DNA of 64,000 nucleotides from NCBI RefSeq assembly GCF_006345805.1, contig NC_043001.1, positions 30,256,001-30,320,000 of the forward strand, given 5' to 3'. Source of the stretch: Octopus sinensis (taxonomy: Eukaryota). Within the stretch, counting starts at the first letter, position 1. Every line of letters begins with the position of its first letter. The notes under the pieces were generated by a model that saw nothing but the letters and a program-made list of their open reading frames with translations, was not told where the DNA came from and ran no database searches. This document shows, piece by piece, positions 7,723-64,000 of the stretch. The position numbers and the translations under genes are program-made.

Positions 7723-7974
7723 GTATGTATAAATTATGTAATAGTAAATTTTATAAAATAATAATTTTTCATTGGTGCAGGAGTGGCTGTGTGGTAAGTA
7801 GCTTGCTTACCAACCACATGGTTCTGGGTTCAGTCCCACTGCATGGCACCGTGGGCAAGTGTCTTCTACTATAGCCTCAGGTCTACCAAAACCATGTGGG
7901 TGGATTTGGTAGACGGAAACTGAAAGAAGCCCGTCGTATATATGTATATATATGTCAAGTCTATATTTCTAACA

Positions 7975-9439: not shown

Positions 9440-10270
9440 ATGAAAGGCTGTTTTCACATTTTCTGCAAATTTGAAGTTTTTCCTTGCAAAAAGTTGTCTA
9501 ATACCTGGAAAATGTGATGGTCAGTTGGTGTAAGGTCTGGTGAATATGGTGGATGACATAGTACTTCCAAGTTCAGTTCCTGTAACTTGAGTAGCATTCT
9601 TTGTGCAACATGTAGTCAAGCATTATCTTGCAAGAAAATTGACCTGTCTGTATTCACCAATCTCGGTTGTTTAATTGCAAGTTCACTCATCATTTCATGC
9701 AATTGCTTGGTGTATACATCTACTGTTATTGACTTACTAGATCTCATGAAGCTGTAGTGGATGACACCAGCACTGGACCACCAGTCAGACACCATTAGCT
9801 TTTTTTGGTGAATATTCTTTTTTGGATTGTGTTTTGACACTTTGTCTCTATCCAACCACCATGCAGAACACTTGCTATTATTGAAAAGAATCCATTTTTC
9901 ATCACATGTAACAATATGATGCAAAAATGGTCTGCTTTTATGCTATGAAAGTGAAGAACAGCAAGTTTCAAGATGACATGTAATTGATGCTCGTTCAGTT
10001 CATGTGGTACTTTTCAAAACATCGACATACAGTGTACTCATTCGCCACATCTTCACTAAACACTTCACTGATGTTCCGAGCTGTCTGGAATGCATTGGTT
10101 CCATGAGAGAACTCATATTCATAAACAGCACGAATTTTTTATCTATCCATGGGTTCACAAAAATTGATTTATAAGAGAAAACTCACAATATAATCAGACA
10201 CTATGAATTGTATTTTGAAAAGTGATGATGTAATTCTCCAATGTTGTAAAACAAAGAATTGTCAGGACAA
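9440..10270 (-). mobile_element. mariner transposase relic
   Basis: IVTCDEKWILF...HQKKLMVSDWWS.GVIHY...LQDNA, mariner DD34D motifs, with stops and frameshifts. Confidence 0.85.
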
Positions 10271-19544: not shown

Positions 19545-19602
19545 ATGAAGCAAATTGTTCTGTTTCTTGGAATTTTTCTCCAAATAAATTTAGCAACATC
19601 TT
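19545..19602 (+). CDS. first coding exon (signal peptide) of the giant repeat protein
   Basis: CATTTTTCAG|AATC ATG, then MKQIVLFLGIFLQINLATS plus T|GTAAGT. Basic n-region, hydrophobic h-region, small-residue c-region. The consensus phase-1 donor matches the acceptor at 22841. Confidence 0.8.
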
Positions 19603-21520: not shown

Positions 21521-22840
21521 ACTGACACATTATAAAACATTTTAGTTGCATTCAGTATTATCTGTAATGGAGTAAAATAAAAACTAGTACTCAATAGACC
21601 AGTGGTTCATAACCAGGTAGTCATGACCCCTGAGTGGGTCATTTGGGGTTTCTCGGGGGTGGGGGAGGGGTCACAGAGGATTTGGGAGAAAGCGATTCCT
21701 TAGACTAATGTAGATTTGTTATACTGCTCTCTCCTTCGTCCTTTCCCTCTCAACTGTGTCATTATTCTGCTATTCTTCATCCCTTTCCACACTGTCGGTC
21801 ATCTCCTACACTCTTCCTACATCCCCCAATTCATCCGTATGATTAATCACCCATACCCTTTATCCATCATTCACTACATCCACTAATCAACCCTACCCAA
21901 TCTACGCAGTCATCACCTGCTCTTCTTTACCTTCCCTCTAAATTTATTTATCATCCTTCAAGATTTGTTCACCTTTCATTATGTTCAAAAACACACACAC
22001 ACATACACACCTTATCTATCCCCTACCTCTAATCCATCTCTCACCCTCCCCATACACTCATGCAACAGTCTACCCACCAACACTCCTTGTTCTTCTATCT
22101 CCACTGATTTCTGCCTGAAACTTTTAAAGGCACACCTTGACTTCTCATCATAACTATTTTTATCTCACTCTAGCTCCAAATGGTCAGTCTCACTTTCTCT
22201 TCTATAATGCAAGTCCCCATGTAGCTAACTCTGCTAAACTAAGAAACCTGTTCTGTTCTGGCCCCCTCTCTCATAATTTAACCCTTATATACTACCATAA
22301 AGCTGCATCTTTCTCTACTGTAGTCCCACTCAGCTGAAGGGCATCTTGTTTTACAAGCTGCATAACAATCTCACTAATACTGAGGTCACAAAAAAAGTAC
22401 ACTCAATAAAGTGGCTGGCATGCATAAGCACATCCGGCTGTAGAAACCATGCCAAAGCAGACACTGGAGCATGATCATCATCATCATCCTCATCGCTTAA
22501 CGTCTGCTTTCTATGCTAGCATAGGTTGGACGATTTAACTGAGGACGAGTGAACCAGATGGCTACACCAGGCTCCAATCTTGATTTGGCAGAGTTTCTAC
22601 AGCTGGATGCCCTTCCTAATGCCAACCACAGTCTTCAAATCTGTTGGATCCTGACAAACCATTCAGCCTATGCCAGCATGGAATATGGACTTTAAAAGAT
22701 GATGAAGATGATATATGAGTGAGAGTGTGTATGTGTGCGTTTGTGAGTGTATAAATGTTTGCTTGTGTATACACACAAATAAACACACTCAAAAATGTTT
22801 CCTTTTTCATATTATTGATTAACATATATTTACTTTCCAG

Positions 22841-25800
22841 ATAAGTGGCCATCATACATTTCTGCAAATATGCCAGTTCTTTTGTCGAATACTGTTCAAG
22901 AGACAAACAAATACCCAAACGAGGCTTCTGGGAAATTAGTAACTAAATTAGTACCAACAACACAAATTCAACAACCAGAAAATATACAGCAATCTTCACT
23001 GTCACAAATGACATCCATTAATCCATTTAAACAAACAAAACCTATAAATCCTCTGATGGCAAAATTCTTGAGAACACGTGATGTATATGCACCAGAAAGA
23101 CAATACAGAGAGGTGAAGAGAATTGAAGTGATTCCAGAAGCTGAAAATAAAGTAATTTTACCATTATCACCAATATCAATGAAGAATAACATAGAAAGAA
23201 TATTTCCAAGTTTAAAAACAAAAAATTGGATAAAAACAGATAGGAAAATTGGACAAGTTGAAAAAAAGATTTTGAAAGAACTTTACAGAACATTGAGGAA
23301 GAAGCAAATGTCACTTAATAGAATGCCTGTGACAACGGAGAGAATGAAAACTGATAGTGAGAAACCATTGGATCTAGCAATAAAAGAAGTAGTAGAAAGC
23401 ATGTTGAAGAAAAATGTTATGCAAGAAAAAATGTTAGGATTGAAACCAAGAATAACAAAAGAAATGATAGAAAATTATTCACAAGAAAAAGAGCCAAAAA
23501 ATTCAAACAGGGAAATATTTGTGAAAGACACAATTCTAAAACTATTACCAAGTCTAATAAAGAATATCTCTTACAAAAGAATGCAAGAAATTGAAAGAAA
23601 AAATAGACATGAAGGAAGGCAGAGAAGGGATGCAAGAATATTGTTAACAGGAACAAAACAAGGGATATTTCAAGAGGCAGATCCTAGGTTATCAAGAATA
23701 GGACTAGAGAAGTCACCTAAACCAGTGGTAGGAGTTTTGCCAGGAATTGCAAAAGTTATGACACCTGGCCAAGAACAAAATGTCTTAACTAGAACAAATC
23801 ATAGAAACTCACCTGTCATAGTGTATCCTGCAAATGTACAAAGGATCTTGCCAAGAATGAATTACCAAAAGTTACCAGGATTATTACAAATATACCAGCC
23901 AAATATATTAGTAAGGAACAAGGAGAATGTAGTATCCAGACCATCCTATGCAATGTTCCCAGTAATGGCTCCAAATGTATTAGCTGCATCAGTACCAGCT
24001 GTTATTCAAAGAACACCAGACAATGCAGGAACTCATGGACTTTTACAAGATGTAAGGCAAGATATGTATAATGAAAACATTAATAGAATGCCAAAAATGT
24101 TACAAAATGGTGTAACAGGAATGATACAAAATGAGGCGCCAGTAATGGTACAAAGCTTGGTACCAGAGAAGGTTCATGTTGTAATGCCAGGAACACTTCA
24201 AAGTAATGCGGCAGGAATGCTGCAAAACGGTATGCCAGGAATGCTACAAAATGGTATGTCAGGAACACTGCAAAACAGTATGCCAATGATGCTACAAAAT
24301 AGTAGGCCAGGAAAGCTGCAACATGGTATGCCAGTAATGCTGCAAAATGGTAGGCCAGGAATTGCACAAAATGGTATGCCAGGAATGCTACAAAATGGTA
24401 TGTCAGGAACACTGCAAAACAGTATGCCAATGATACTACAAAATAGTATGCCAGGAAAGCTGCAACATGGTATGCCAGTAATGCTGCAAAATGGTAGGCC
24501 AGGAATTGCACAAAATGGTATGCCAGGAATGCTACAAAATGGTATGCCAGGAACACTGCAAAATAGTATGCCAATGATGCTACAAAATAGTATACCAGGA
24601 AAGCTGCAAAATGGTATGCCAGTAATGCTGCAAAATGGTAGGCCAGGAATTGCACAAAATGGTATGCCAGGAATGCTACAAAATGGTATGTCAGGAACAC
24701 TGCAAAACAGTATGCCAATGATACTACAAAATAGTATGCCAGGAAAGCTGCAACATGGTATGCCAGTAATGCTGCAAAATGGTAGGCCAGGAATTGCACA
24801 AAATGGTATGCCAGGAATGCTACAAAATGGTATGCCAGGAACACTGCAAAATAGTATGCCAATGATGCTACAAAATAGTATACCAGGAAAGCTGCAAAAT
24901 GGTATGCCAGTAATGCTGCAAAATGGTAAGCCAGGAATTGCACAAAATGGTATGCCAGGAATGCTGCAAAATGGTATGCCAGGAATGCTGCAAAATGGTA
25001 GGCCAGGAATTGCACAAAATGGTATGCCAGTAATGCTGCAAAATGGTAGGCCAGGAATTGCACAAAATGGTATGCCAGGAATGGCACAAAATGGTATGCC
25101 AATAATGCTGCAAAATGGTATGCCAGGAATGGCACAAAATGGTATGCCAGGAATGCTGCAAAATGGTATGCCAGTAATGCTGCAAAATAGTATGCCAGGA
25201 ATGCTGCAAAATGGTAGGCCAGGAATTGTACAAGGTGTAATGCAAAAATCTCAAGAAATCATATCACCAGGAATGGTGCAAGTTATGATACCTGGAAGTA
25301 TGCAAAATGTGATACCTGAAATAAGAGCAAGAAAAATGCAACATGTAATAAGCGGAGAAGATAAAAAAATGATATCAAAAACTGTTCAAGATACAGCAAA
25401 TACATATGCCAATTCAAGGCAACAAAATGATGAAAAAATGTTAAAAAATGACAACAAACAAGAAATATTTAAAAAGAATTCTATAAATAATTTGACAAAT
25501 GAGGAGAAAAAACAGTCAATAGAAAATTGGCAAATATCAAGAACATTACATGCACCATATCTAGAATTGAATAAAAACCCACATAATATGTATGGGAATA
25601 TATTTGAAACAAAGGAATTTAAAATTCAAGGAATCCCAGTTAGGCCATCATCAGGAAGCTTGCAACAAATGTTACCACAAATTTCCCATAGACTGCAAGT
25701 GCTATCTGGATCTGTGCAACAACCACCATTAACTATTCAAAAGATGAGGGTTCAATTAGAACCATATAAATCTGAAAGGAATCAATATATGTTACCGGGA

Positions 25801-28800
25801 ACTGTAGAAAGAATGGTTGAAGGAACAGTGCAAAAGATGTTACCTAGGGTTGTTGGAGAAATTTTAACAGGAAATGCACAAAGGATATTGCCAGAGAAAG
25901 GGCAATTGATGTTACATGGAACAGGACAAGAGATACTCACTGCAAAAGGACAAAGGATACAACATGGAACTGGACAGGGCATGTTACTTGGAACTGGGCA
26001 AAGGATTCTACCTGGATTTGGGCAAGGAATATTACCTGGAACTTGGCAACAGATGTTACCTGGAACTAAGCAACTGATGTTACCTGGAATTGGACAACAT
26101 AGGTTAAGTGTAACATGGCAAAGAATATTGCCTGGAACTGGGCAAAGGATGTTGCCTGGAACTGGACAAGGAGTGATACTTGGAACTGAGCAAGGGGTGT
26201 TACCTGGAACTGGACAAGGAGTGATACTTAGAACTGGGCAAGGGGTGTTACCCAGAACTGGACAAGGGGTGTTACCTGGAACTGGACAAGAAACGATACT
26301 TGGAACTGGGCAAGGAATGTTACATGGAACTGGACAAGGAGTGATACTTGGAACTAGGCAAGAAGTGTTACCTGGAACCGGACAAGAAACGATACTTAGA
26401 ACTGGGCAAGGAATGTTACATGGAACTGGACAAGGAGTGATACTTGGAACTGGGCAAGGGGTGTTACCTGGAACTGGACAAGGAGTGATACTTGGAACTG
26501 GGCAAGGAGTGTTACCTGGAACTGGACAAGGAGTGATACTTAGAACTGGGCAAGGAATGTTACATGGAACTGGACAAGGAGTGATACTTGGAACTGGGCA
26601 AGGGGTGTTACTTGGAACTGGACAAGGAGTGATACTTGGAGCTGGGCAAGGGGTGTTACCTGGAACTGGACAAGGAGTGATACTTAGAACTGGGCAAGGA
26701 ATGTTACATGGAACTGGACAAGGAGTGATACTTGGAACTGGGCAAGGGGTGTTACCTGGAACTGGACAAGGAGTGATACTTGGAACTGGGCAAGGGGTGT
26801 TACCTGAAACTAGACAAGGAATGATACTTAGAACTGGACAAGGGGTGTTACCTGGAACTGGACAAGAAACAATACTTGGAACTGGGCAAGAAATGTTACA
26901 TGGAGCTGGACAAGGAGTGATACTTGGAACTGAGCAAAGGATGATACCTGGAACTGGACAAAGTACAATACAAGGTACATTACTTGGAACTGGACAACAG
27001 ATGTTACCTAGAACTGTACAAATGATGTTGCCAACAACTAAGCAAGTTTTGTTACCTGCATTTCGACAAAGGATATTACTAGGAACTGGGCAAGGAATAT
27101 TAACTGGAAGTGAACAAGGGATGTCACATGGATCAGAAAAAGGTGTGTTACTAGGAACTGGACAGAGGATGTTACCAGCTACTATGCAAGGCATGCTACC
27201 TGGAACTGCAAAAGGTATTTTATCAAGAACTGGGCAAGTGATGTTACCAACTTCTAAACCAGGGATACTTTTCAGAACTGGGCAAGTGATGTTACCTGGA
27301 AGTGAGCAAGTGATGTTGCCATCTACTGAGCAAGAGTTGTTACTTGAAACTAGGCAAGGGATAATGCCTGGAATTAAGCAAGAGATATTACCTGGAACTG
27401 TAGAAAGAATATTATCAGAAACTCAACAAGGGATGTTACCAATAACTCACCAATGGATATCACCAACAAATGAACAGGGAATGTTATTTGGAATTGGTCA
27501 AGGAATGTTCCCTGGAAATGAGCAAGTGATTTTACCTGGAACTACTGAAGGAATATTATCAGACACTGAGCAAAGAATAGTACCTAACACTGGGCAAGGG
27601 ATATTACCTGCTGGGAAAGTGAAGTTACTTGCAATGAGGCAAGGCATGTTACCTGCAACTAGGCAAGAGATGTTACCTGGAATTAAGCAATGGATGTTGC
27701 CGGGAACTCAGCAAGGGATGATACATGCAGTTCCACAAAAAACATTACCTGTTATTGTGCAAGTAATATTACCTGGAACTGGACAACAGATGTTACAGGG
27801 AACTCAGCAAAAGATATTGCCTGTAACTGAGCAATGGATGTTACCTGTATTTAAGCAAGGGGTATTACCTGGAACAGGTCAAGGTATGTTACTTGGAACT
27901 GGGCAAGGGATACTACCTGGAACTGAACAGGCAATGCTACCAGGAAGAAGACAGGGTATCTTTGTACAGGGGAACTTACCAGAAAGTGCACAAAGGATCT
28001 TACCTAAAAATGAGCAAGTAATTTTACCTGCAACTGAACAAGGATCACTACCTGGAAATGTAATATGGATGTTACCTAGGAATTGGCTAGGGATGTTAAA
28101 TGCAACTGGGAAAGGAACTTCATCTGGAATTGTGCAAGAAGCATTACCAGGAATGAAACAAAAATTCCTTCTTGGATATAGGCAAGGTATGTTACCTGGA
28201 ACTGGACAAGAGACATTTGCAGGATATTTGCAAAAGGCCTTAGTTAAAAATGGACAAAATGTGTCACCTGTAACTGGACAACAGATATTACCAGAAAATG
28301 TACAAGAAAGGTTAAATGGTACCAGACATAGAATTTTACCAGTAGAGCAAATCATTTTGCCTGGAGGTATAAAGGAAATATTACCTGTAGCAAGGCAAGA
28401 GTATTTTCCTGAAACTGTGCCCAGTTTGTTACCTGTAGCTGAGCAAGGGGTAGTAGAAGGAAATGTGCAAACAATATTAACTAGCAATAGTCAAAGCTGG
28501 TTCCCAAATAATTTGCAAGGAAACATACCTAAAAATATGCAAGTTGTGGTACCTGGAAATGTACAAGGGACAATATTAGGAACAGTGAAAGAAATACCAC
28601 CTCCAGCTAAGCCAGTGATGATACCAGGAACTCTTAAAGAGATCTACCCTGGTAATTGCCATTGGACTGTACCTAAAATTGGACAAGGGGTGTTACCAGA
28701 AAATGGTCAATGGATCTTTCCTGGAAATAGACAAGTAGTGGTACCTGGAACTAGACAAGGGATGTTACTTAAAACTGGACAAGGGGTCTTACCACAAGTT

Positions 28801-30148
28801 GAGCATAGACTATTAAATGAAAATATGCAGAGGGATTTAACTGGAAATATTAATGGCATCTTACTTAGAAATAGGCAAAATGTGTTACTTATACCTGTGC
28901 AAGGGATTTTACCAAGAAATCATCAAGGGATTTCACCTGAAACTGGATATATGATTTCATCAGACAATGTTCAAAATAACTTCATTGGAACTAAGCAGAT
29001 GTATCCTGAATTTGTTCATAGCTTAGGTAACAATCAGCAAGAGAGTTTAGCTGTAATTGAGCATGAAGAGTTGCCTAGACCCCTCCAATGGACCCTAGCA
29101 GAAAATTGGCAAGGGATGTTACCTGGAGCTGTTAAAGGGACCTTTCCAGAAACTTTGCAACTGACCTTACCACAAAACAAACAGGGGATCTTACCTGGAA
29201 CTGGGAAAGAGATGTTAGCTGTGACTGGGCAGAGGGTGCTACCAGGCACTAATCAAAGGATCTTAGTTGGAATTAGAAAAGATATATCACTTGGAAGTGG
29301 GCAAAGGATGTTGCCAGCAAATAGGCAAAGTATCTTACTCCCAACTGTTCAAGGAGTGTCACCTGCAAACTGGTATGTGATTTTACCTGGGACTGGACAA
29401 TCAATGGTATCAGGGACTAGGGAAAGGATATTACCAGGAACAGGATATGGAATTTTACCAAAAAATGTGCAAAGGATCTCACTTAATCCTGGGAAGGTGA
29501 TCTTTACGGGAGGTAGGCAAAGTGTGTCGCCAGAAGCTATTCAAGGAGCTTTACTAGGAAACAGACAAATGATATTACCAAAAAATGGTCAAAGGGTGTT
29601 ATCTGGAATTGATCAAGGGATATTACTTGCAAATGGACAACAAAAGTTTGGTGGACATGGGCAACAAATTTCCTCAGGAAATATACAAGGGAATTTGCTG
29701 AGAACTGTACCAGTGATGTTACCTGGAACTGTTCAAAATGCAGAACAATATACAACATCACGAATGATGCCAGATATGAGAGGATTAGTAATAATTCCAA
29801 CGTTATCACAAGGAATAAATCCTAAAATGTGGCAAAGAACAGTGCCAAACAGGCTAAATTTGGGAATAGTACAAAACTCACTAAGTACCACGCAAACACT
29901 TTTACCTGAAATATCAGTAAGGAAAATGTATGGAACATTTACCCAAGCAAAGAATGGAATACCACTAAGAGCAAAACACACAAAACTACAAAACAAATTC
30001 AAATCAATACCAGTTAACCCCCAGACGGGTTTAATGACTTTTCTGGAAACTGGAAATAATAGACAGATTTGGAAACCATCTTCAAACCAACATCATGTAG
30101 CAGAGATTGAATTAAAACAGGAAGCAGCTGGCTCTAAACCACAAAAAC
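22841..30148 (+). CDS. 7308-bp symmetric (phase 1-1) exon encoding the bulk of a giant secreted octapeptide-repeat protein
   Basis: TTTACTTTCCAG|AT AAG TGG acceptor and AAA C|GTAAGT donor. 2436 codons without a stop in AT-rich DNA. The ORF track's C-terminal His/Thr run is intronic microsatellite read-through. Confidence 0.92.
24217..25224 (+). repeat. coding tandem array 1: 42 x 24-bp units (MLQNGMPG type) with 144-bp and 288-bp higher-order repeats
   Basis: Units counted from the translation. The order MSG/TLQNS/xLQNS/KLQH/MLQNGR/IAQNG recurs every 6 units. Confidence 0.95.
25789..29739 (+). repeat. coding tandem array 2: about 165 x 24-bp units (VLPGTGQG type), with a homogeneous core at ~26130-26960
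   Basis: GGAACTGGACAAGGA motif at 24-bp spacing. VIL/VLP alternation (16 aa), and R/MLH every 48 aa in the core. Confidence 0.95.
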
Positions 30149-30169
30149 GTAAGTTGAGTTTTCATACAT

Positions 30170-30270
30170 ATGTACATATACATACATACATACACAAGCA
30201 CACATGCATGCATGCAGACACACACATACACATACACACACACACACATACACACACGCACACACACACA
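30170..30270. repeat. (CA)n/(CATA)n microsatellite just inside the intron
   Basis: Directly visible. Confidence 0.9.
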
Positions 30271-30449
30271 TCAGGTGTATGCAGTTGATGTATCATACCC
30301 CATGTATTATACCCAGCAGTATCTGTTGCAGGGATGAATTTTCACACACCCGGTCTGATGTTTATTGTATTTTTAACACAGTATTTCCTGATGTGATGTT
30401 ATCTTGGAACAAATACTGCAGTAACTAGCCTATCAAGTGTACATACTTG

Positions 30450-30493
30450 GAAGGAGGAGAAGAAGAAGAAGAAAAGTTTGATACACAGCTGAT

Positions 30494-30528
<35 letters not shown>

Positions 30529-31410
30529 CTCCCTCTCTCACACACACACACACCCTCTCTCTCTCTTTCTCGAGAAGAGGGGAGGGGGGATGGAGGAGGG
30601 GAGGGGAGGGAAGAAGGTAAGGAGGAAGAACAGTAGGAGGAAAAAGAAGAAGAGGAGAAAGGAAGAAGAAATAGAGGAGAAGGAAGAGGAGGAAAAAGAA
30701 AAGGAGGAAGAAAAGGGGGATGAAGAAGAGGAGTAGGAGGAAGGAGAAATAGAGGAGGAGGAAAAGAGGAGTAGGAGGAACAAGAAGAGAAAGAGGAGGA
30801 AGAAGAAAAAGAAGAAGAGGAGGAAGGAGAGAAGGGGATGAAGAAGAAGAGTAGGAAGAAGAATAAATAGAGAAGGAAAAGGAGGAAGAAGAAATAGAGG
30901 AGAGGGAGAGGAAGAAGAGAAGGAGGAAGAAGAGAAGGAGGTAGAAGAGGAGTAGGAGGAATAAGAAATAGAGGGTGGAAGAGGAGGAGGGGGAGGTGGA
31001 AGATAAGGAAGAGAATGAAGAAGAAAAAGAAGAAAAGAAGGAGGAAGTAGAGGGGAGGAGGAGTAGGAAGAAATGGAGGAGTATGAGGAAGAAGAGGAGG
31101 AAAAAGAAAGGGGAGGAGGAGAGGAGAAGAAGAGGCAGAGGAGGGGAAGAGGAGGGGATTGAGGAGGAGAGGTGAGGAGGAGGAAGCAGCAGAAGAGAAG
31201 GTGGAAGAGGAAGAGGAGGAGGAGTCGGGAAAAGAAGATGAAGAGGAGGAAGAGGAGGAGTCGGGGAAAGAAGATGAAGAGGAGGAGGAGGAAGGAGGAT
31301 AAGAAGAAGAAAAGGCAAAGCTGAGGAGGAGGAGAGGGGAGAAAGGAAGGAGGGTAGGAGAGGGAGGGCAGGAAGAAGAAGAATAGGAGGAGGAGGAGGA
31401 GGAGGAGGAT
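30450..31410. repeat. ~900-bp almost pure purine (GAG/GAA) low-complexity tract with CT/CA runs
   Basis: Directly visible. Explains the Leu/Ser/Pro/Phe and Glu/Lys ORFs. Confidence 0.95.
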
Positions 31411-31635
31411 ATGTATTAGCACACAAAGAACAAAAATTTACTGAGCATATGAGACAGGTATGAAATGGGCATCAGATACAAATGCCATGGATATGAGCTA
31501 AAAACTACAGAGTAAACTTAAATTTTGTATCTTGAAGTATAAAAACTGGTAATTCACATCAAAATAAATGAATACTGCTTTATTTATCAATAATAAATCT
31601 CTGAACGAGATGTAAACAGTAACCGCTCGACAACG

Positions 31636-31912
31636 TAAAGTATAATAGCCATCTCAATATGGCTAACCACTAAGGGTGGGTGTTACTGTAGCTTTTAGCC
31701 CCAGGAGATCATCGTCTCCAGCTGGCTTTAGGCACACTATCTGTGCCCTTATGGTATTTGCAAAGGGAGGTCATCCCTCTCTCGTAAGCCTAAGTGATAT
31801 GCACGGATTGCAGTTTCGAGGTATTTGCCTCTTGTCAACGCACGGTAATCACCGGTTTACAGTAACACCCACCCTTAGTGGTTAGCCATATTGGGATGGC
31901 TATTATACTTTA
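31636..31912. mobile_element. MITE with 55-bp terminal inverted repeats
   Basis: 31636-31690 and 31858-31912 are reverse complements with one mismatch. Ends are TA. Confidence 0.9.
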
Positions 31913-32451
31913 TGCTTTATTTATTAAATATCTATAAAACTGAAATGCCAAAAAGTTGTTTGATTTCTTGGTTATTTGTCTCATTTTGGGATGGGAACAG
32001 TTTAAGGGGCGGTAGACGGGGTCGGATTAGTCTCAAAATTTACATGGGTGGGTGGGTTAAATAGGGTGGGCAATGGTGTGAGGAGGGTTGCAAGTCGCTC
32101 AGGGCTACCGTTTGGTTGCCATCACCACCAAAACCCAAGCAAAGCATGGGTCAAAATAGCTAGTCTTAATATATAAAACAAAGTTTGTGTGTGTGTATGT
32201 GTTTCTTATGGATTCAAAAACTGGGTTACCAATTTGGCGGTGTTTAGCTAAGGCAGGCAACTCTTTATATCTTAGAGCATAATGAGAAAATGTTTAAAAT
32301 ACATGGAGTTTTACCTGGGAATGAAATTTCGAAGATATACTGTCAACTTTATTAGTAGTTTTTAGTAGACAATCTTTTAATGTGAAATATGTTTGCGCTT
32401 TGTTTAGCCCAGATGTAGCAGACATATCACATTGTTTACCACAGACACACT

Positions 32452-32512
<61 letters not shown>

Positions 32513-33646
32513 GTTGTGGTGAAAAAAATACTTTTTCTCAGAATATTTTGCACAATAATTTTTTGAGAAATCTGGACAGCTTTCTTACTGCAAACTATTC
32601 AACTTCAAATTTGAATTGTTCATTCTTGGAAGTCAAGTAGACTGAGATGTACATAAATTGTTATCATATAGAGTGGAAGTTCAGTACAAAGATTTGAACT
32701 CATTATCTTGTGGTTAGTAATCCATTACCTTAAATTTGAAGCCATAAAGTCTTTAAACATTACTTTACTGGGTTCAGTCTTTCAACTGTCACCATGATCG
32801 GGTATCACCTTCAAAATTTAATTAATCATACTGACCTCAGTACATATTTCAATCTGGCATTTATTTTATAGATTCTCTGCTTGATGAACTGCTAGCTTTG
32901 AGGCATGATGGGACACAATATGCGATTTACCAACAAATGTAAACACACACATATTAGATGCAAGAATGATTGTGTGTTTGAGAAGTTTGCTTCCCAACCA
33001 CATGGTTCCATGTCCAGTCCCTTTGCATGGTACCTTGGGCAAGTGTTTTCTACTATAGCCATAGGCCAACCACAGACTTGTGACTGAATTTGGTAGACAG
33101 AAACTGCAGCATTATTCATCAGAAAATGACTGAAAAACATGTTTATACAGAAGAGTTGTTTGCTTCATACTCCTTGTGTGCTGATACTGCCCATAAGAAA
33201 GGAACAAATAATTCAACGTGGTTGTAGGTCATAACACCCAGGCAATGCCAAGGTGCATTGCTAGTCAATTAATAAATCATTGGGAAGAAGTAGTTTCTTT
33301 CATAAGTACAAGGTTTCATATGCATATTAAAGAGCAGGAACAAGATGCAGTGCACCTGAGCACCGTATACAATAATTTCATTATTATTATTAAGATGTTA
33401 ATGATGCTCATTTCTTTCTTAAAGGCATTAGAAATAAAACATCATCATTTTATGTCTGTTTTCCATTCTGGAATGAGACATTAGTGATGCAACAAAGAAC
33501 TGAAGCTGCCTTGTAGACTGAGCCAATCAGAAGTTTACATCAACTCTTGTTTGAATGCATCCATATCCTGAGATTTTAAAAATAAGCTTTGCTACTACAA
33601 TCTACAGATTGTATATAATTAGAATTTGTTTTCTTTATTCCATTAG

Positions 33647-33774
33647 CTGCTAACTCAACAGACCAGAATATTACTGAAGAGGTGAAGGCTTCAGTCTCAG
33701 TCACCAGTATTACATCATATTCTTGGATAATATATATTATTCTGCTTGCCTTAAATCTCCTGACTGGAATGTAG
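33647..33774 (+). CDS. candidate terminal exon encoding a GPI-anchor-signal-like tail
   Basis: TTTGTTTTCTTTATTCCATTAG|CT phase-1 acceptor, reading (P)ANSTDQNITEEVKASVSVTSITSYSWIIYIILLALNLLTGM*. Two N-glycosylation sequons, a Ser/Thr spacer and a terminal hydrophobic run. Confidence 0.65.
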
Positions 33775-33929
33775 ATATATATATATATACACATATGTAT
33801 ATCATACTTTAAGATAAAGCATTAGAAAAAGTGAGTATCCAGCCACAAAATACTTGCTAAATGAACTTATTAAACCTTCTTAATAACCTATTTGCTTCAT
33901 CTGTGGGAGAGTCGCAATTGGTTGTATTG

Positions 33930-34400
33930 ACAGGGCTGACTGCCTTCTAGTTTAAAAGTTTATATCCATTTTGCCACTTATGCAGCCCCATGTCCCTGAC
34001 AACGATTTTTAACTCTTCTTGGTCCAATGCACCTAAGCGTAAAACTGGCAATATGTGAAAATATATCGGAATGTTATTTGGCAATAGAAGTAGTGAACAA
34101 TCAGCAAATGTGTCAGCTTGTATGTCTTGCAAACAACTTGCACATGCAAGTGCTACCAGTCAAAAACTCCACATACCGGAAGCCAGCAACTGTATGGGGT
34201 CATCAGGAGAGAATGCGCACCGTTTCGGGGCCTACTTCTCAACGGCATCAATGCGCACTGACCCCCCTCACTGATATGAGGCCCCACTTGCTAGATCAGC
34301 TGGTTATCAAATAAAGCTCAATATCCTTCTAGCCATCGCTCATCATCTCTTTTTAACCAAATCCAGTGGCTAGCCTTCTCCACTGTAGATTTGATATCAG
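33930..34400 (-). mobile_element. degenerate non-LTR retrotransposon C-terminal fragment (HERO/NeSL-like)
   Basis: The minus-strand peptide IKSTVEKASHWIWLKRDDERW resembles the AxxASxWxWLKR end of RLE-type ORFs. The rest is degenerate. Confidence 0.35.
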
Positions 34401-34918
34401 TCATGGTGGTATTGATACCTTCAAATAAGTAAAAATTGTGATAGACTAACATACTACCCAGGTGAATATATGTATCTTGACCACTTCGTTCCTAAAGGAA
34501 AATTAGTTAATTTATCTCCTGAGAATGTCACACATAAAAGGAATGTTTTTTTTTTTATTTTGGTTTTAACATTCATTTTTTCGTAGTCGCATGAATTAGA
34601 AATATAGATATTTGTAAATGGATTATTGGAATAAATATTTTAAAATAAAGATTAAATTAAAACTAGATGATAAGATACCAGTCCAAAAATGTAAACAGAC
34701 TCAAGCCAATATTTTGGTTAAATTAGTCAAAGAAATAAAATATTGTATCTGGCTCTGGCTTTGGCAAGAGTTTCAATGCTTCACTTTGTATTTAGTAAAC
34801 TAGCACAAGAAACTCATATTTTGGTTTCCTTAGAAATACATGTAGTTTTTCTGAATTTTTATTAACTTATATATCTTTTATCATTATTGGATAAAGTCAT
34901 TATTTCATTTTCCTTCAG

Positions 34919-36180
34919 ATAACTTGGCAGTACCAGTGAACGGTATATTTATGCAAAAGGTTCAAATGTCTTCAAACTACCAAAATAATTCTGAGAATCC
35001 AAAGAGTTTAAAACAATCATCAACCCAACAAAGGAGGGAGAACATCATTAAAAGATCTCTTTTTCACAATTATGCCTCCGCATCTGCACCTCTTAAAAAA
35101 CCAAAAGCTCTGAGAAACAACATACCTAATTTAATCAATTCAGTAATTCCAGCATTTAAGCAATCGAGTCATGAGCCAAAAGGAAGTTTAACACTTCCAT
35201 TTTCTGGTTATAAATCTCATGTACAGATGCTTGATAATGACTTTAGAACACTTTCAAAGAAAGACACATCTCATCTACAAACAATAACTAATTCAGAAAT
35301 GTCACACTCTCAAGACAGAAACAAAATACCAAATACAAATATTGGTATAAAGTCAAATGTATATGCAATGCCAAATAATGGATATACTATACCTTCCACT
35401 GAATACAAGTTTTACACACTAAGACAAAATGGTAAAAGTTATTCTAGATTACCAAACAAACTGCTACAATTGCTTCAACATAACCTTTTGTATCATTATG
35501 CTGGAAAAAATGTACCATTTGAAGGTTTTAGAAAGTTATCACCAATACTTTACAATCCCTCTGTGCCTTTTAGTATACAACAACCTAGACCTTACATACT
35601 TCAACAAATACCAGTAATGAATTTTGAAAGGCCAGTTACTAGAGATGGACCTTACATAGTAGAACCAGGACTACATTATCTTTATCAGCAGCCACCATCA
35701 GGATATGAAACTCGTATTTCAGGAACAGTATCAATTGGTGCAAACCAGATATATACGACCAAAAGAGGTAAAGTGTCGTATAACCCGTATAGAAACTACA
35801 ACCAAGATAAAACGTTATTGAGTAAACCTCCTGTTAAATATAATTCTACATTAAAGTCATTACTTAATCTTGAAAATAATTCGAAAATTTTGAATTCCCT
35901 TGGTTTAAAACATACTAACAAAATTGAACCAAAGACTACAAATGTCTACATATTAAAAACTATTCCTGAATCAAATAATATTACCAGAAGAAATATAAAA
36001 GCAATTAGCAAAGATGTTAAAATTGCACTTCCAAGAAATTCAGAGGGAATACATTTGGATTCCAATTCTACAAGTAAAAGAAGTATAAGAGGAATTTTTT
36101 CATTACGAAATGAACAAGCAAAAAAATTTTCTTTGCATAATTATCATGATTCTGGTTATGAAAATAATCACAATAGATAG
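34919..36180 (+). CDS. terminal exon (420 aa, Tyr/Pro/Asn/Lys/Ser-rich) of the giant protein
   Basis: TATTTCATTTTCCTTCAG|AT AAC TTG phase-1 acceptor, joining as C+AT=His. Open to TAG at 36178-36180. 58+7308+1262 = 8628 nt = 2875 aa plus stop. Confidence 0.8.
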
Positions 36181-36415
36181 AAATAGAAATATATTTCTTA
36201 GAAAATGCATATATGCACACACACACACACACACACATTAGTACGCGATATGTGTAAGGCTATAATAACATATATTCATACAAGTATTTGTATGAATGTG
36301 CTTATGTATGTATGTGTGTATATATACATATATATATATATATACTGGAGTAAGCACATAAATGTGAAACAAGGTGGAAAAAAGAGTACTCAAATACCAG
36401 AGGTAGAGTAATATG

Positions 36416-44739: not shown

Positions 44740-46200
44740 ATAATACAGATGGAAGCTTGAGGGCTGAACACAGACAATGCCCACCGATTGTTACTTCCTG
44801 ATAACATTGTTCTTTTTTTGAAAAACCACAAACGAGGTAATGAACCTCTTTAACAGTTACAAATTGAAGCGCTGAGCCTCTTACCAATCAAATCTCACAA
44901 AAGTTTAGCAAACATATACAATCATTTTTTTCAACTTGAGGCACTAAGCCTCTTACCAAACTCACCAAATTCAAATTGAGGCACAAAAACCTCTTACTCT
45001 ACTTCCCCGACTAAGTCTCTTACTGCCTGCAGTCACAAGGTGAGGCCCCATAAGAGACAATTGTATTCATCCTTAGTAAAGGAATCTATCACCCTGTAGA
45101 AATAATTTTCTGCCATGACCTCTGTAGTCATCTGTGGAGGCCAGTCCGGGCTTTCAATGCAGGTCAGGACCGCCTGTTTCCGACCTTCCAGATTCCTCAC
45201 AAAGTTCTCTATGGCCCCTCCCTTAAGAAAGAAGATCACAAATTCCTCATTTATTATACTGGGAGGGGCTACAGTTTCCTCCATCAATGGCACAATTCCC
45301 ACCAAGGTTTCAGGACATGCCAGCAGTGTACTGCTAACCGCTGGCACTGTCCCATTCTTTTTCTTCTTTTTTCTCATCTTTGATATGGGAGGGGGTGGTT
45401 CCTCTGCTTTAACCAGAGGATCATCCCTCAACTCCTGCAGCTTTAGGGTCCTTTGGTAAGCAACCATTGTTACCCACCTTCTTCCTTTTTTTCGGGGAGG
45501 TCTCTACCTTCTCAACTACCTCCATCTCTCCTTCCAGAAGAGGTGGGGGAGCTCTTCCACTGCCAACTGTTCCAGGACCCTACTCTGGTACTGGGGACAG
45601 TTCTTTTTAATGTGGCCTGGTTCCAGGCACAGGTGACACTTGGGGAGGGGGCGTCCCTCAAGTATAACTGGATACCTGCAACCGGCCATTTTCAAAAAAT
45701 CTGGAAAGACCAGATTCTTGGCTGATTGGGTCCACAGGGTCAAAACAGCTTTTGACCCAACCCAATCAGCCGCTGGCAAAATTTTAACATTAAGCAGCTT
45801 GGATCCGCTGCCACCCAGACCCCAGAAGATAGTATCCGCTATCCACTCGGGTTCTATCCAGGGTGGCAACCCACAGACCCAAGCTCTTGTCAACTTCTTC
45901 CCACAATACGTGAGAAGAAACAAAATCTCTTCGCCCTCTAAGGGCTGGCTCGCAAATTTGCAAGCCTCCTCAGGGGTGTCAAATAGCAACCACACCACTG
46001 CATACTTGACCCCAATGGAGATGAATTTAATAGTTGGCAAATACTTTGCCAACACTTTTTCAATTTTTGTTTTTTTAAAGAGAGCGATGGTGTCCAGCAA
46101 CTTTGAGTAAGTCCTTAACACCACCGTCCTCTCTTCAAAGTCTTTCATCCACTGTTTGGGTGGGACAACCTCCCACTCCAACGTAGAGTTGTTTATCTTT
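44740..46200 (-). mobile_element. frameshifted gag-like ORF1 (CCHC zinc knuckle) of a non-LTR element, with no ORF2 visible
   Basis: CHLCLEPGHIKKNC knuckle after an RRM-like region (45516-46181). Continues across at least two frameshifts through SPKKRKKV into 45033-45467. Confidence 0.7.
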
Positions 46201-47839: not shown

Positions 47840-48420
47840 TCATCAACATCAAAATAAAAATTGTATGGATATTGTAGTTGTGATACCCGTGCCGGTAGCA
47901 CGTAGGGCCTCACAGAGGAAATGACGAAGACCAAGACCCCTGAGATATGCTGTGACTGTGAAGACCCGACAAATGGCTCGCAGGACAGCCTGCTGTGCTA
48001 ACCTTGGACCGTAGAGTGACCCGCTGTTCTCAAGGAGACCTATTGAGTCGAGTACGTCAACACCAACATCAAAATAAAAATCAAATGGAAATTGTAGTTA
48101 AGACACCTGTGCCGGTAACACATAAAAAGCACTGCCCAAACATGGCAGATGCCAGCGCTGCTTGACTGGCGTCCGTGTCGGTGACACGTAAAAGCACCAA
48201 CCGATCGTGGCCATTTGCCAGCCTCCTCTGGCACCTTGCCGGTGGCACGTAAAAAACATCCACTACACTCACGGAGTGGTTGGCATTAGGAAGGGCATCC
48301 AGCTGTAGAAACAATGCCAAACCAGACTGGAGCCTGGTGCAGCCTCCATGGCTTACCAGACCCCGGTTGAACCATCCGACCCATACTAGCATGGAAAACG
48401 GATGTTAAATGATGATGATG
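47840..48420 (+). mobile_element. RTE 3' fragment plus SINE family B
   Basis: CCTCACAGAGGAAATGACGAAGACC RTE tail motif, family B body and (GAT)n tail. Confidence 0.75.
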
Positions 48421-48829
48421 ATATATATATAAAATAATAAAACTCAAAAGTTTGTTTTCCTGCCCTTTAAGATGGTAAAGATTACGAATAAAAATGTCAT
48501 TTACCCCTTAAAGTAAAAAAACCAAGTTGAAAATGTTATTTGTGGCAACAACACTTCAAAGAGTTGTCGCAGCTACCACTGTCCGTCCTTTTTTCTGACT
48601 TCCTATTTGCTTCCCTTAATCATTAATACAACTTTCGGAGTGCCATAGACCGAAAGATAAAAATTTTCCCCAATATTTTTATATTTTTATGAATCACAGG
48701 TACTTGATTTTTTTTCTTTTCTGAAAGGGGAAAATTATGTTATTTAAAATAAAATATTAAACTTTATGTTAAGTTTGTCATCTTAATCAAAACCAAACTG
48801 CTGTTCAAACAATGATAACAAAATTAGTC

Positions 48830-62523: not shown

Positions 62524-62904
62524 CTAAAAATACAAGAGAAAATAAATTAATGAATTTTTGAGGTTTGATTTTCTAAACCAAACTAATCCAGAAAATACAA
62601 CATACTATACCATTTTTTTCAAGGTAACAGCAAAGTATTTCAAATTTGGACAATGTATTATAAGGTTTTAGAATTTGATGACATTCATACTGCAAAGAAC
62701 CCAAATGTGAAGTGGAAGTTGAATCTATTTCCAGCTTGATGGAGTAAAGGAAACAGTAATGCCCTTGACTAGAGAAAAATTTGATTTTTTTCATTTGGTG
62801 GTCTTAAATGTGTTAAATTAATAGCCAGTGTGTCCACATGTATGGATACATACAAACATAAAACAAAATATCATTCTCATATCTTCCATTCTTAGCTGCC
62901 TTCA

Positions 62905-63260
62905 TCATCATCATCATTTAACATCAGTTTTCCATGCTGGCATGGGTTGGACGGATTGACTGGGGACAGGCAAGCCAGGAGGTTGCACCAGGCTCCAATC
63001 AAATCTGGCAAGGTTTCTACAGCTGGATGCCCTTCTTAACGCCAACCACTCCGTGAGTGTAGTGGATGCTTTTTATGTGCCACTGGCATCAGCTATGCTT
63101 GGATGGTGCTTTTTATGTGCTACCGGCACAGGAGCCAGTCGGGGAGGAGTGGCTGGCATTGACCATGTTCAGATGGTGCTTTTTACATGCCACCAGCATG
63201 GGGAGCCAGTGAGGCAGCACTGGCATCAACCCACACATGAATGGTGCTTATTGTGTGCCA
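62905..63260 (-). mobile_element. SINE family B
   Basis: (CAT)n start and reverse body motifs. Confidence 0.8.
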
Positions 63261-64000
63261 TCAGCATGCTTCCTCATATTATTTTTCAAGCTCAAATTGG
63301 TATCATTTTCATTTCTAATAGGATCTACATCAATGCTACAAATGTATATTTAGTTCTTTTTAATTTCTTTTTTTGGGGGGTTGCTAATGAATAAAAGTTT
63401 CCTAAACTTCCCATTAACACCATTTCTGCAATTTTCAATCCACTGGTCCAAAGCTGATACAAACTGTGATTAAATTTAACACCTAACTATATATAGGTTT
63501 AAAAGAACAACAAAGACAAATGGCATTAATCAATAAAGGATGACATTGAAAGAGGCCAATGAAGTTATAACACTGACTATAACTCAGAACTAGGCTCAAA
63601 CCTCACTTTATTTGGGAAAACACCATAAGTATTATTATGATAATTATTATTAATGCTATGATGCTAAAAATATGCAGTGCTAGCATGGCAGAAATGATTG
63701 AGGAGATGGTAAAAGATTTTCAAAGAAAAATTAATCAAGCTGATTCTACTGTAGTTACTACAGATTACTCTATCATTATTATGATTAGGAATAATAAAAT
63801 ATAAATCTCTCTGAGAGATTTAGAAATGCAATATTTCTAATTTTCTAGATCAGTGAATTTATTTCACTTGAAATTCTATAAGTTTTCAAATGCAAAGAAG
63901 CACTGACAGCTAGCAAGCCAAGCTACTCCAGACTGATGAAGAGCAATAACTCTGAAACTAGTCTCTGGTGGCTGGCTCTGCTGGGTGGAGGTACTTATCT

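What the first reader, a model, noticed from the sequence alone, without database searches (positions are those of the whole stretch)
33647..33774. Hidden GPI-signal-like terminal exon: a possible switch between tethered and secreted isoforms
Seen: a strong acceptor followed by a 43-codon in-frame exon, too short for the ORF track, ending S/T-rich spacer-WIIYIILLALNLLTGM-stop. It lies upstream of the long terminal exon and has the same phase. Knowledge: a small-residue omega site, polar spacer and terminal hydrophobic run without cytoplasmic tail define GPI signals. Inference: alternative last exons could give a ~2500-aa membrane-anchored repeat coat or a secreted form with the Tyr-rich tail.
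Basis: partly seen in the sequence, partly recalled or inferred. Interest (0 to 1): 0.8.

Follow-up and report, generated by a model that had tools for sequence, protein, structure and literature searches.

The report
Unproven GPI-like exon in intron
The last intron of a giant secreted repeat-protein gene holds a short open stretch that would end the protein in a textbook membrane-lipid-anchor (GPI) signal, but nothing available shows it is ever spliced in, so it stays a candidate rather than a discovery.

Summary
A good acceptor at 33645-46 opens an exon at 33647. It is in phase 1, the same phase as donor 30148|GTAAGT and the true terminal exon at 34919. It reads P-ANSTDQNITEEVKASVSVTSITSYS-WIIYIILLALNLLTGM-stop. 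I also found a signal-peptide exon (19545-19602) in the matching phase, so the protein should enter the ER, which a GPI signal requires.

A simple rule-based check finds omega site, polar spacer and a 16-residue uncharged tail. The whole configuration turns up by chance in about 0.1-3% of equivalent intron/phase trials.

Against it:
- The codon usage looks non-coding.
- Part of the hydrophobic run is translated TA-rich low-complexity DNA.
- The stop codon abuts a (TA)n microsatellite.
- A SINE-head remnant lies 170 nt upstream.

No transcript or orthologous sequence covering the exon could be reached. The only relative found covers the terminal exon alone.

My estimates:
- About 0.6 that it is a non-functional look-alike, either never used or included only as noise.
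- About 0.3 that it is a genuine GPI-anchored isoform.

If real, it is a new member of a known kind, the secreted/GPI alternative-exon switch seen in ceruloplasmin.

The parts
19545..19602 (+). Predicted first coding exon: signal peptide MKQIVLFLGIFLQINLATS plus 1 base, with donor CTT|GTAAGT in phase 1. An acceptor (ttcatttttcag) lies just upstream of the ATG, which implies a 5'UTR exon further upstream.
   Evidence: This is the only ATG + hydrophobic core + good donor combination on the whole + strand in any of the three phases. It is in the phase that the big exon needs.
22841..30148 (+). Giant symmetric (phase 1-1) exon of 7308 nt. It encodes about 2436 aa of Q/G/P/L/M-rich octapeptide repeats (GMLQNGMP, GTGQGVLP) with non-repetitive ends. 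The donor GTAAGT is at 30149-30154.
   Evidence: No Pfam match. No homologues found.
33440..33477 (+). Remnant of the head of the window's abundant ~400-nt SINE (CATCATCAT...TTTTCCAT), 170 nt upstream of the candidate exon.
   Evidence: nhmmer with a profile of the window's own copies gave E = 0.0011 for the head only. The exon body is not detectably SINE.
33625..33646 (+). Candidate 3' splice site: polypyrimidine tract plus TAG.
   Evidence: It has 13/16 pyrimidines, equal to the real terminal-exon acceptor. There is no yUnAy branch-point consensus at 18-45 nt, and upstream AGs lie at 33606 and 33621.
33647..33774 (+). Candidate exon coding part. Polar linker with two N-X-S/T sequons (NST, NIT): 33647-33690. 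Candidate omega Ser at 33691-93, or at 33697-99. S/T-rich spacer up to 33723. Hydrophobic tail WIIYIILLALNLLTGM: 33724-33771. TAG stop: 33772-74.
   Evidence: rule-based GPI check; sequons.
33775..33805 (.). (TA)n-type microsatellite that directly abuts the stop codon.
33831..33836 (+). Donor-like site AAA|GTGAGT. It would make 33647-33830 a 184-nt cassette exon with an internal stop.
   Evidence: Its score is 9, the same as the real donor at 30148. Sites this good occur at 0.41 per kb.
33869..33874 (+). ATTAAA hexamer 95 nt after the stop, a possible poly(A) signal if the exon is terminal.
   Evidence: Such hexamers occur at 2.6 per kb in the window, so this is weak evidence.
34919..36180 (+). 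Established terminal coding exon (419 codons, N/S/Y-rich), phase 1, with acceptor ttttccttcag.
   Evidence: An orthologous genomic contig L001 from a related animal keeps the frame: exon indels are 9, 27, 9 and 6 nt, against intron indels of 1, 14, 2, 3 and 1 nt. dN/dS is 0.56.

Best explanation
Most likely this is intronic DNA that only looks like an exon. It would be a pseudo-exon, or at most a low-level unselected inclusion, in the last intron of a gene for a giant secreted repeat protein. T-rich and TA-rich intron sequence lies between a SINE-head remnant and a (TA)n microsatellite. That sequence supplies a pyrimidine tract with an AG and a 42-codon open run. Its translation is rich in Ile, Leu, Tyr, Ser, Thr and Asn, which mimics a GPI signal. 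On this reading the normal mRNA joins 30148 to 34919 and the segment leaves with the intron. Shown: the gene model, the phase, the sequence features and their chance frequency. Inferred: that the segment is not used functionally.
For: 1. The full configuration is not vanishingly rare.
2. The codon log-likelihood is -0.20 per codon. That lies inside the non-coding ORF distribution (24% score higher) and below all 73 held-out coding windows of this gene.
3. The residues I-I-Y-I-I are encoded by ATAATATATATTATT. The stop abuts a TA microsatellite, and TA repeats read as IYIYIY all over this window.
4. A SINE-head remnant lies at 33440-33477.
5. There is no consensus branch point at the usual distance.
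6. Acceptor-like and donor-like sites of this strength occur at about 0.4-0.5 per kb, so pseudo-exons are expected.
7. No protein in 5.8 billion sequences carries this peptide.
Against: 1. Markov simulations put the configuration at only 0.07-0.9% per intron.
2. It is the best acceptor in the intron.
3. The null hits are visibly poorer GPI mimics, being microsatellite or His/Pro-rich.
4. The 17-residue linker has two N-glycosylation sequons, seen in 0.5-0.7% of non-coding ORF windows (noticed post hoc).
5. A signal-peptide exon exists, so a GPI signal would be read in the right compartment.
6. The codon test is confounded, because a hydrophobic tail cannot resemble this Q/G/P-rich protein.
7. 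The protein libraries evidently hold almost no DNA of this animal or its relatives, so the negative searches carry little weight.
Confidence: 0.6

Rival explanations
1. This is a genuine alternative exon that gives a GPI-anchored isoform. The signal peptide (19545-19602) takes the nascent chain into the ER. Splicing 30148 to 33647 replaces the 419-residue N/S/Y-rich C-terminal domain with a 42-residue tail. The exon would end either at a poly(A) site near 33890 or at donor 33830. GPI transamidase would cleave at Ser (KA-S-VS, or SV-S-VT) and attach the ~2470-residue repeat domain to a lipid anchor. The 30148 to 34919 form would be secreted.
For: 1. The phase matches and the acceptor is the best in the intron.
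2. All four regions of a GPI signal are present: polar linker, small omega and omega+2, a 6-8-residue S/T spacer, and a 16-residue uncharged tail ending the protein. The general architecture is described in PMC6726743.
3. There are two sequons in the linker.
4. A signal-peptide exon was found.
5. A donor or an ATTAAA is available downstream.
6. Chance probability is about 0.1-3%.
7. The mechanism has precedent in ceruloplasmin, with secreted and GPI forms made by alternative splicing (PMC8347646).
Against: There is no transcript, orthologue or predictor evidence at all. The codon usage is non-coding-like. The surroundings are low-complexity and repeat-derived. The prior that a given secreted-protein gene has such an exon is well under 1%; this is my estimate from the 0.2-2% share of GPI proteins in proteomes.
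Confidence: 0.3
2. The exon is genuinely spliced, but its role is not lipid anchoring. As a 184-nt cassette (33647-33830) it brings in a stop 56 nt before the last junction. It would then act as a poison exon that lowers output. Alternatively, its uncleaved hydrophobic end would act as a C-terminal membrane anchor or as an ER-retention/degradation tag.
For: Strong acceptor and strong donor bracket a normal exon length of 184 nt, which is not a multiple of 3. The stop lies inside the exon. The tail of 16-19 residues is short for a stable transmembrane helix.
Against: An acceptor-donor pair of this quality is expected about 0.2 times per intron of this size by chance. Whether junction-dependent mRNA decay operates in this animal is unknown. 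There is no expression evidence.
Confidence: 0.1

Closest known systems
Ceruloplasmin secreted versus GPI-anchored isoforms made by alternative 3' splicing (PMC8347646)
   Same: A secreted protein is converted to a surface-tethered one by swapping the C-terminal exon for a short exon that encodes a GPI signal. The signal peptide and body are shared.
   Different: In ceruloplasmin the isoforms are shown at mRNA and protein level and are conserved. Here nothing beyond genomic sequence supports use. The body is an orphan repeat protein, not an enzyme.
NCAM-120 (GPI) versus NCAM-140/180, and acetylcholinesterase H (GPI) versus T forms. These are recalled from general knowledge and were not checked here.
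   Same: Alternative C-terminal exons choose between a GPI anchor and another C-terminus on a common ectodomain.
   Different: Those alternatives are transmembrane or tailed oligomeric forms, in conserved, well-characterised genes.
Intronic pseudo-exons. This is general knowledge: introns hold many segments with good splice-site matches that are not used.
   Same: The acceptor and donor matches are as strong as the gene's real sites. The context is repeat and microsatellite. There is no coding signature.
   Different: Ordinary pseudo-exons do not usually also carry a phase-matched open frame that ends in a complete GPI-like signal with glycosylation sequons.
Exonised SINE fragments (Alu-type exonisation; general knowledge)
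   Same: A SINE-head remnant lies 170 nt upstream, and the pyrimidine tract loosely resembles a SINE segment in a MAFFT alignment.
   Different: Profile searches with both SINE families of the window do not match the exon or its acceptor.

Membership tests
C-terminal GPI-attachment signal | An N-terminal ER signal peptide on the same protein | tested here: met
   The exon 19545-19602 encodes MKQIVLFLGIFLQINLATS, with a phase-1 GTAAGT donor that fits the big exon's phase. It is the only such hit on the + strand. This is a prediction and has not been verified by cDNA.
C-terminal GPI-attachment signal | Small residues at omega and omega+2 | tested here: met
   S-V-S (omega at 33691-93) or S-V-T (omega at 33697-99), with A or V at omega-1. 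This comes from my own simple rule.
C-terminal GPI-attachment signal | A polar spacer of about 5-10 residues between omega+2 and the hydrophobic tail | tested here: met
   VTSITSYS (8 residues) or SITSYS (6 residues), both uncharged.
C-terminal GPI-attachment signal | A hydrophobic tail of about 12-20 residues that ends the protein, with no cytoplasmic residues | tested here: met
   WIIYIILLALNLLTGM-stop, mean Kyte-Doolittle hydropathy 2.4, no charged residue. Only 6 of 1030 non-coding ORF tails reach this value.
C-terminal GPI-attachment signal | A positive call by a trained predictor (NetGPI, PredGPI, big-PI) | not testable with these tools
   No such predictor is installed. Only a hand-written rule was applied.
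C-terminal GPI-attachment signal | Lipid anchoring shown experimentally (PI-PLC release, detergent partitioning) | not testable with these tools
   This is a wet-lab test.
Alternative 3' exon of this gene (secreted/GPI switch) | A splice acceptor in the phase of the shared upstream donor | tested here: met
   Donor 30148 leaves 1 base, and both 33647 and 34919 complete the codon. Acceptor strength equals that of the real one.
Alternative 3' exon of this gene (secreted/GPI switch) | Junction-spanning transcripts | not testable with these tools
   No RNA data are available. The protein libraries hold nothing carrying this peptide or the big-exon tail.
Alternative 3' exon of this gene (secreted/GPI switch) | A 3' end: a poly(A) signal, or a donor if the exon is a cassette | tested here: inconclusive
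   ATTAAA at 33869 and donor AAA|GTGAGT at 33830 are both present, but both motifs are common (2.6 and 0.41 per kb).
Alternative 3' exon of this gene (secreted/GPI switch) | Frame and hydrophobic tail conserved in related species | not testable with these tools
   The only relative reachable (Logan contigs L001-L003, 83% nt identity) starts at window position 34644, 870 nt downstream of the exon. A search with all nearby intronic ORFs found nothing.
Alternative 3' exon of this gene (secreted/GPI switch) | Coding-like codon usage | tested here: not met
   The log-likelihood is -0.20 per codon. Non-coding ORFs average -0.39 (sd 0.30) and coding windows +0.28 (sd 0.17). The test is confounded by the amino-acid composition of the training exons.
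Exonised SINE | Exon or splice site derived from a recognisable SINE copy | tested here: not met
   Only the SINE head at 33440-33477 matches (E = 0.0011). There is no match over 33478-33900 for either SINE profile.

The most novel reading that the evidence does not exclude
A young, lineage-specific exon arose from AT-rich intron DNA. It gives an orphan, ~2500-residue, elastomer-like octapeptide-repeat protein of an octopod-like animal a GPI anchor. One gene would then make either a cell-tethered repeat coat or a secreted form with an N/S/Y-rich C-terminal domain. This would be a case of de novo origin of a membrane-anchoring signal.
Probability: 0.3. Interest if true: 0.5.

Novelty: new member of a known kind. 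Interest (0 to 1): 0.3.

Why it matters
If the exon is used, it would show how a fast-evolving, taxon-restricted structural protein gains a surface-tethered form through a low-information signal that AT-rich intron DNA can generate almost for free. It would also give a handle on where this unknown giant repeat protein acts, on the cell surface or in the matrix. If it is not used, it is a cautionary example. In AT-rich genomes, GPI-like or transmembrane-like endings behind good acceptors turn up in roughly 1-3% of intron/phase trials. Such 'hidden exons' therefore need transcript or comparative support before they are believed.

Tried and rejected
- I searched 5.8 billion proteins with the big-exon tail plus the mini-exon peptide. 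There were no hits.
- I searched the same library with 23 concatenated intronic ORFs from 33150-34660, hoping to land on an orthologous contig. There were no hits.
- An exhaustive HMMER search of 1.84 billion representatives with the big-exon tail gave one spurious bacterial repeat protein at 29% identity.
- An exact look-up of the window's own terminal-exon ORF found nothing on record. The source animal is therefore absent from the collection.
- Pfam on the N-terminal part, the C-terminal part and the terminal exon gave nothing.
- Rfam and tRNA scans of the window gave nothing.
- I tested the SINE-exonisation idea. A MAFFT alignment hinted at similarity, but nhmmer profiles of both SINE families match only a 38-nt head upstream. 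I rejected the idea.
- GC content of the exon against its flanks does not discriminate.
- A literature search for the run accession of the related sample did not identify the species.
- I considered a scan of the metagenome contigs with a degenerate pattern and dropped it. Expected sensitivity at about 14% divergence was around 10% even if such DNA were present.

Full report
**What is in the sequence**

The window is AT-rich eukaryotic DNA (31-44% GC). It is crowded with SINE copies, TA and CA microsatellites and retroelement fragments.

- **The candidate exon.** At 33645-46 an AG follows ttgttttctttattccatt. From 33647 the frame that starts with a split codon stays open for 41 sense codons to TAG at 33772-74. 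It reads (P)ANSTDQNITEEVKASVSVTSITSYSWIIYIILLALNLLTGM*.
- **The upstream donor.** The 2472-codon open frame upstream (22870-30288) is cut by a consensus donor, AAAC|GTAAGT, after 30148. This leaves one codon base.
- **The terminal exon.** Its acceptor, ttttccttcag|A at 34919, continues in the same phase into a 419-codon frame.

**The gene around it**

- **Signal peptide.** I scanned the + strand for ATG + hydrophobic core + good donor. This gave exactly one hit in all three phases: 19545-19602, MKQIVLFLGIFLQINLATS, donor CTT|GTAAGT. It is in phase 1, which is the phase required by the acceptor at 22840|22841. An acceptor just before the ATG suggests a further 5'UTR exon upstream.
- **Predicted product.** The gene therefore encodes a secreted protein with three coding parts: a signal peptide, a 7308-nt symmetric (1-1) exon, and an N/S/Y-rich terminal exon. 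The big exon carries octapeptide repeats (GMLQNGMP and GTGQGVLP arrays).
- **No known family.** It has no Pfam domain. It has no homologue in the protein libraries apart from one relative of the terminal exon.
- **The one relative.** P0001 lies on three ~1.5-kb genomic contigs of one sequencing project. The contigs align to 34644-36236 at 83% identity across intron and exon alike.
- **Evidence that the terminal exon is coding.** Exon indels are 9, 27, 9 and 6 nt. Intron indels are 1, 14, 2, 3 and 1 nt. A 1-nt indel at 36125 changes the last ~18 residues. dN/dS is 0.56. The terminal exon is a real, fast-evolving coding exon.
- **What is inferred.** Its link to the big exon rests on strand, phase and splice sites, not on a transcript.

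**Is the mini-exon more than chance?**

| Feature | Frequency |
|---|---|
| Acceptor-like sites, at least 13/16 pyrimidines and Y at -3 | 0.5 per kb; the intron has one plus the real one |
| Open run of at least 42 codons from a random point | P = 0.12 |
| Non-coding ORF tails passing my GPI rule | 10 of 1030 |
| Non-coding ORF tails matching the candidate's tail hydropathy | 6 of 1030 |
| Full configuration, real non-coding DNA | 4 other distinct cases (at least 12/16) or 2 (at least 13/16) in 137 intron-phase equivalents, i.e. 1.5-2.9% |
| Full configuration, Markov order 3 and 5 simulations | 0.07-0.9% |
| Two N-X-S/T sequons in a 17-residue window | 0.5-0.7% of non-coding ORF windows |

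- My GPI rule requires an uncharged tail of 12-20 residues with mean hydropathy at least 1.8, a polar spacer of 5-10 residues, and small omega and omega+2.
- The real non-coding DNA was read in four orientations: forward, reverse-complement, reversed and complement.
- The null cases are poorer mimics, being microsatellite-encoded IYIYIY or His/Pro-rich.
- I noticed the sequon feature after the fact, so it counts for less.

**Evidence against a functional exon**

- The codon log-likelihood, trained on this gene's non-repeat coding parts against window non-coding DNA, is -0.20 per codon. That is typical of non-coding ORFs and below all held-out coding windows. The test is biased, because a hydrophobic tail cannot resemble a Q/G/P-rich protein.
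- The first third of the hydrophobic run is encoded by ATAATATATATTATT.
- The stop abuts a TA microsatellite.
- A SINE-head remnant sits at 33440-33477.
- No consensus branch point lies at 18-45 nt, and AGs at 33606 and 33621 shorten the AG-free zone. The real terminal acceptor is not ideal in this respect either.

**Other anatomy**

- A donor as good as the gene's own, AAA|GTGAGT, follows at 33830|33831.
- ATTAAA lies at 33869.
- The segment could therefore be a terminal exon of about 245 nt, or a 184-nt cassette with an internal stop. The protein is the same either way. In the cassette case the mRNA would carry a junction 56 nt past the stop.
- Both motifs are common in this DNA.

**What could not be done**

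No transcript evidence and no orthologous sequence over 33647-33774 could be reached.

- The source animal is absent from the collections.
- The relative's contigs stop 870 nt short of the exon.
- Searches with the peptide and with all neighbouring intronic ORFs found nothing.
- Spliced products may not be looked up.

These negatives say little about the exon, because the libraries hold almost nothing from these animals.

**Weighing**

- **Prior.** GPI proteins make up about 0.2-2% of proteomes (PMC6726743). From that I put the prior that a given secreted-protein gene carries a GPI-signal alternative exon in its last intron at a few per thousand.
- **Chance.** The chance of the look-alike is about 0.1-3% per intron, times a look-elsewhere factor of 2-3.
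- **Adjustments.** The sequons and the quality of the signal add perhaps a three- to four-fold boost. The junk-like context and the codon result subtract somewhat.

| Reading | Probability |
|---|---|
| Non-functional look-alike, never spliced or spliced only as noise | about 0.6 |
| Genuine GPI-anchored isoform | about 0.3 |
| Genuine exon with another role (poison exon or uncleaved anchor) | about 0.1 |

**Comparison with what is known**

A switch between secreted and GPI-anchored forms by alternative 3' exons is an established mechanism. Ceruloplasmin is one example (PMC8347646). NCAM-120 and acetylcholinesterase H are others, recalled from general knowledge.

If real, this would be a new member of that kind, in an orphan repeat protein, possibly with a recent de novo origin of the signal. 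It is not an exonised SINE, because profile tests failed.

The membership features of a GPI signal that can be read from sequence are all met. Those that need a trained predictor, transcripts, orthologues or biochemistry remain untested.

Noticed in passing
window 19545-19602 (+): A predicted signal-peptide exon (MKQIVLFLGIFLQINLATS, donor GTAAGT, phase 1) lies 3.2 kb upstream of the giant exon. An acceptor immediately before the ATG implies a further 5'UTR exon upstream.
   Followed up: partly
window 22841-30148 (+): A single 7.3-kb exon encodes about 2436 aa of Q/G/P/L/M-rich octapeptide repeats. Arrays lie at 24212-25233 (GMLQNGMP) and 25965-26961 (GTGQGVLP), and become degenerate up to 27926. 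The motif recalls elastomeric PGQ/GPGQQ-type repeat proteins. There is no Pfam domain and no homologue in the protein libraries.
   Followed up: partly
window 34919-36180 versus L001 289-1478: The terminal exon evolves fast: 73% aa identity at 86% nt identity, dN/dS 0.56. It keeps its frame through four multiple-of-3 indels. A 1-nt indel at 36125 gives the two animals different last ~18 residues.
   Followed up: yes
window 30592-31409: An 800-nt purine-rich (GAR)n low-complexity block lies in the last intron. It gives long spurious Pro/Ser/Leu ORFs on the minus strand.
   Followed up: no
window 31636-31690 and 31858-31912: A 55-nt inverted repeat, 98% complementary, with arms 167 nt apart, lies inside the last intron. 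It looks like a MITE or a hairpin.
   Followed up: no
window-wide, for example 62900-63290 (+), 48035-48423 (-), 7774-7954 (+), 32956-33108 (+): There are two abundant SINE families. One has about 25 copies or fragments of a ~400-nt element with a CATCATCAT head. The other has about 18 copies of a ~180-nt tRNA-like element that ends in (TA)n. One copy of the second family lies in the last intron at 32956-33108.
   Followed up: partly
window 45516-46181 (-) and 9616-9924 (-): A retroelement gag-like ORF with a CCHC zinc knuckle, and a mariner-type transposase fragment.
   Followed up: no
window 34416-34583 (+): A second ORF tail in the same intron passes the simple GPI-like rule (…NVFFFILVLTFIFS). 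It is not in the required phase behind any good acceptor. It illustrates how easily such tails arise in this DNA.
   Followed up: yes
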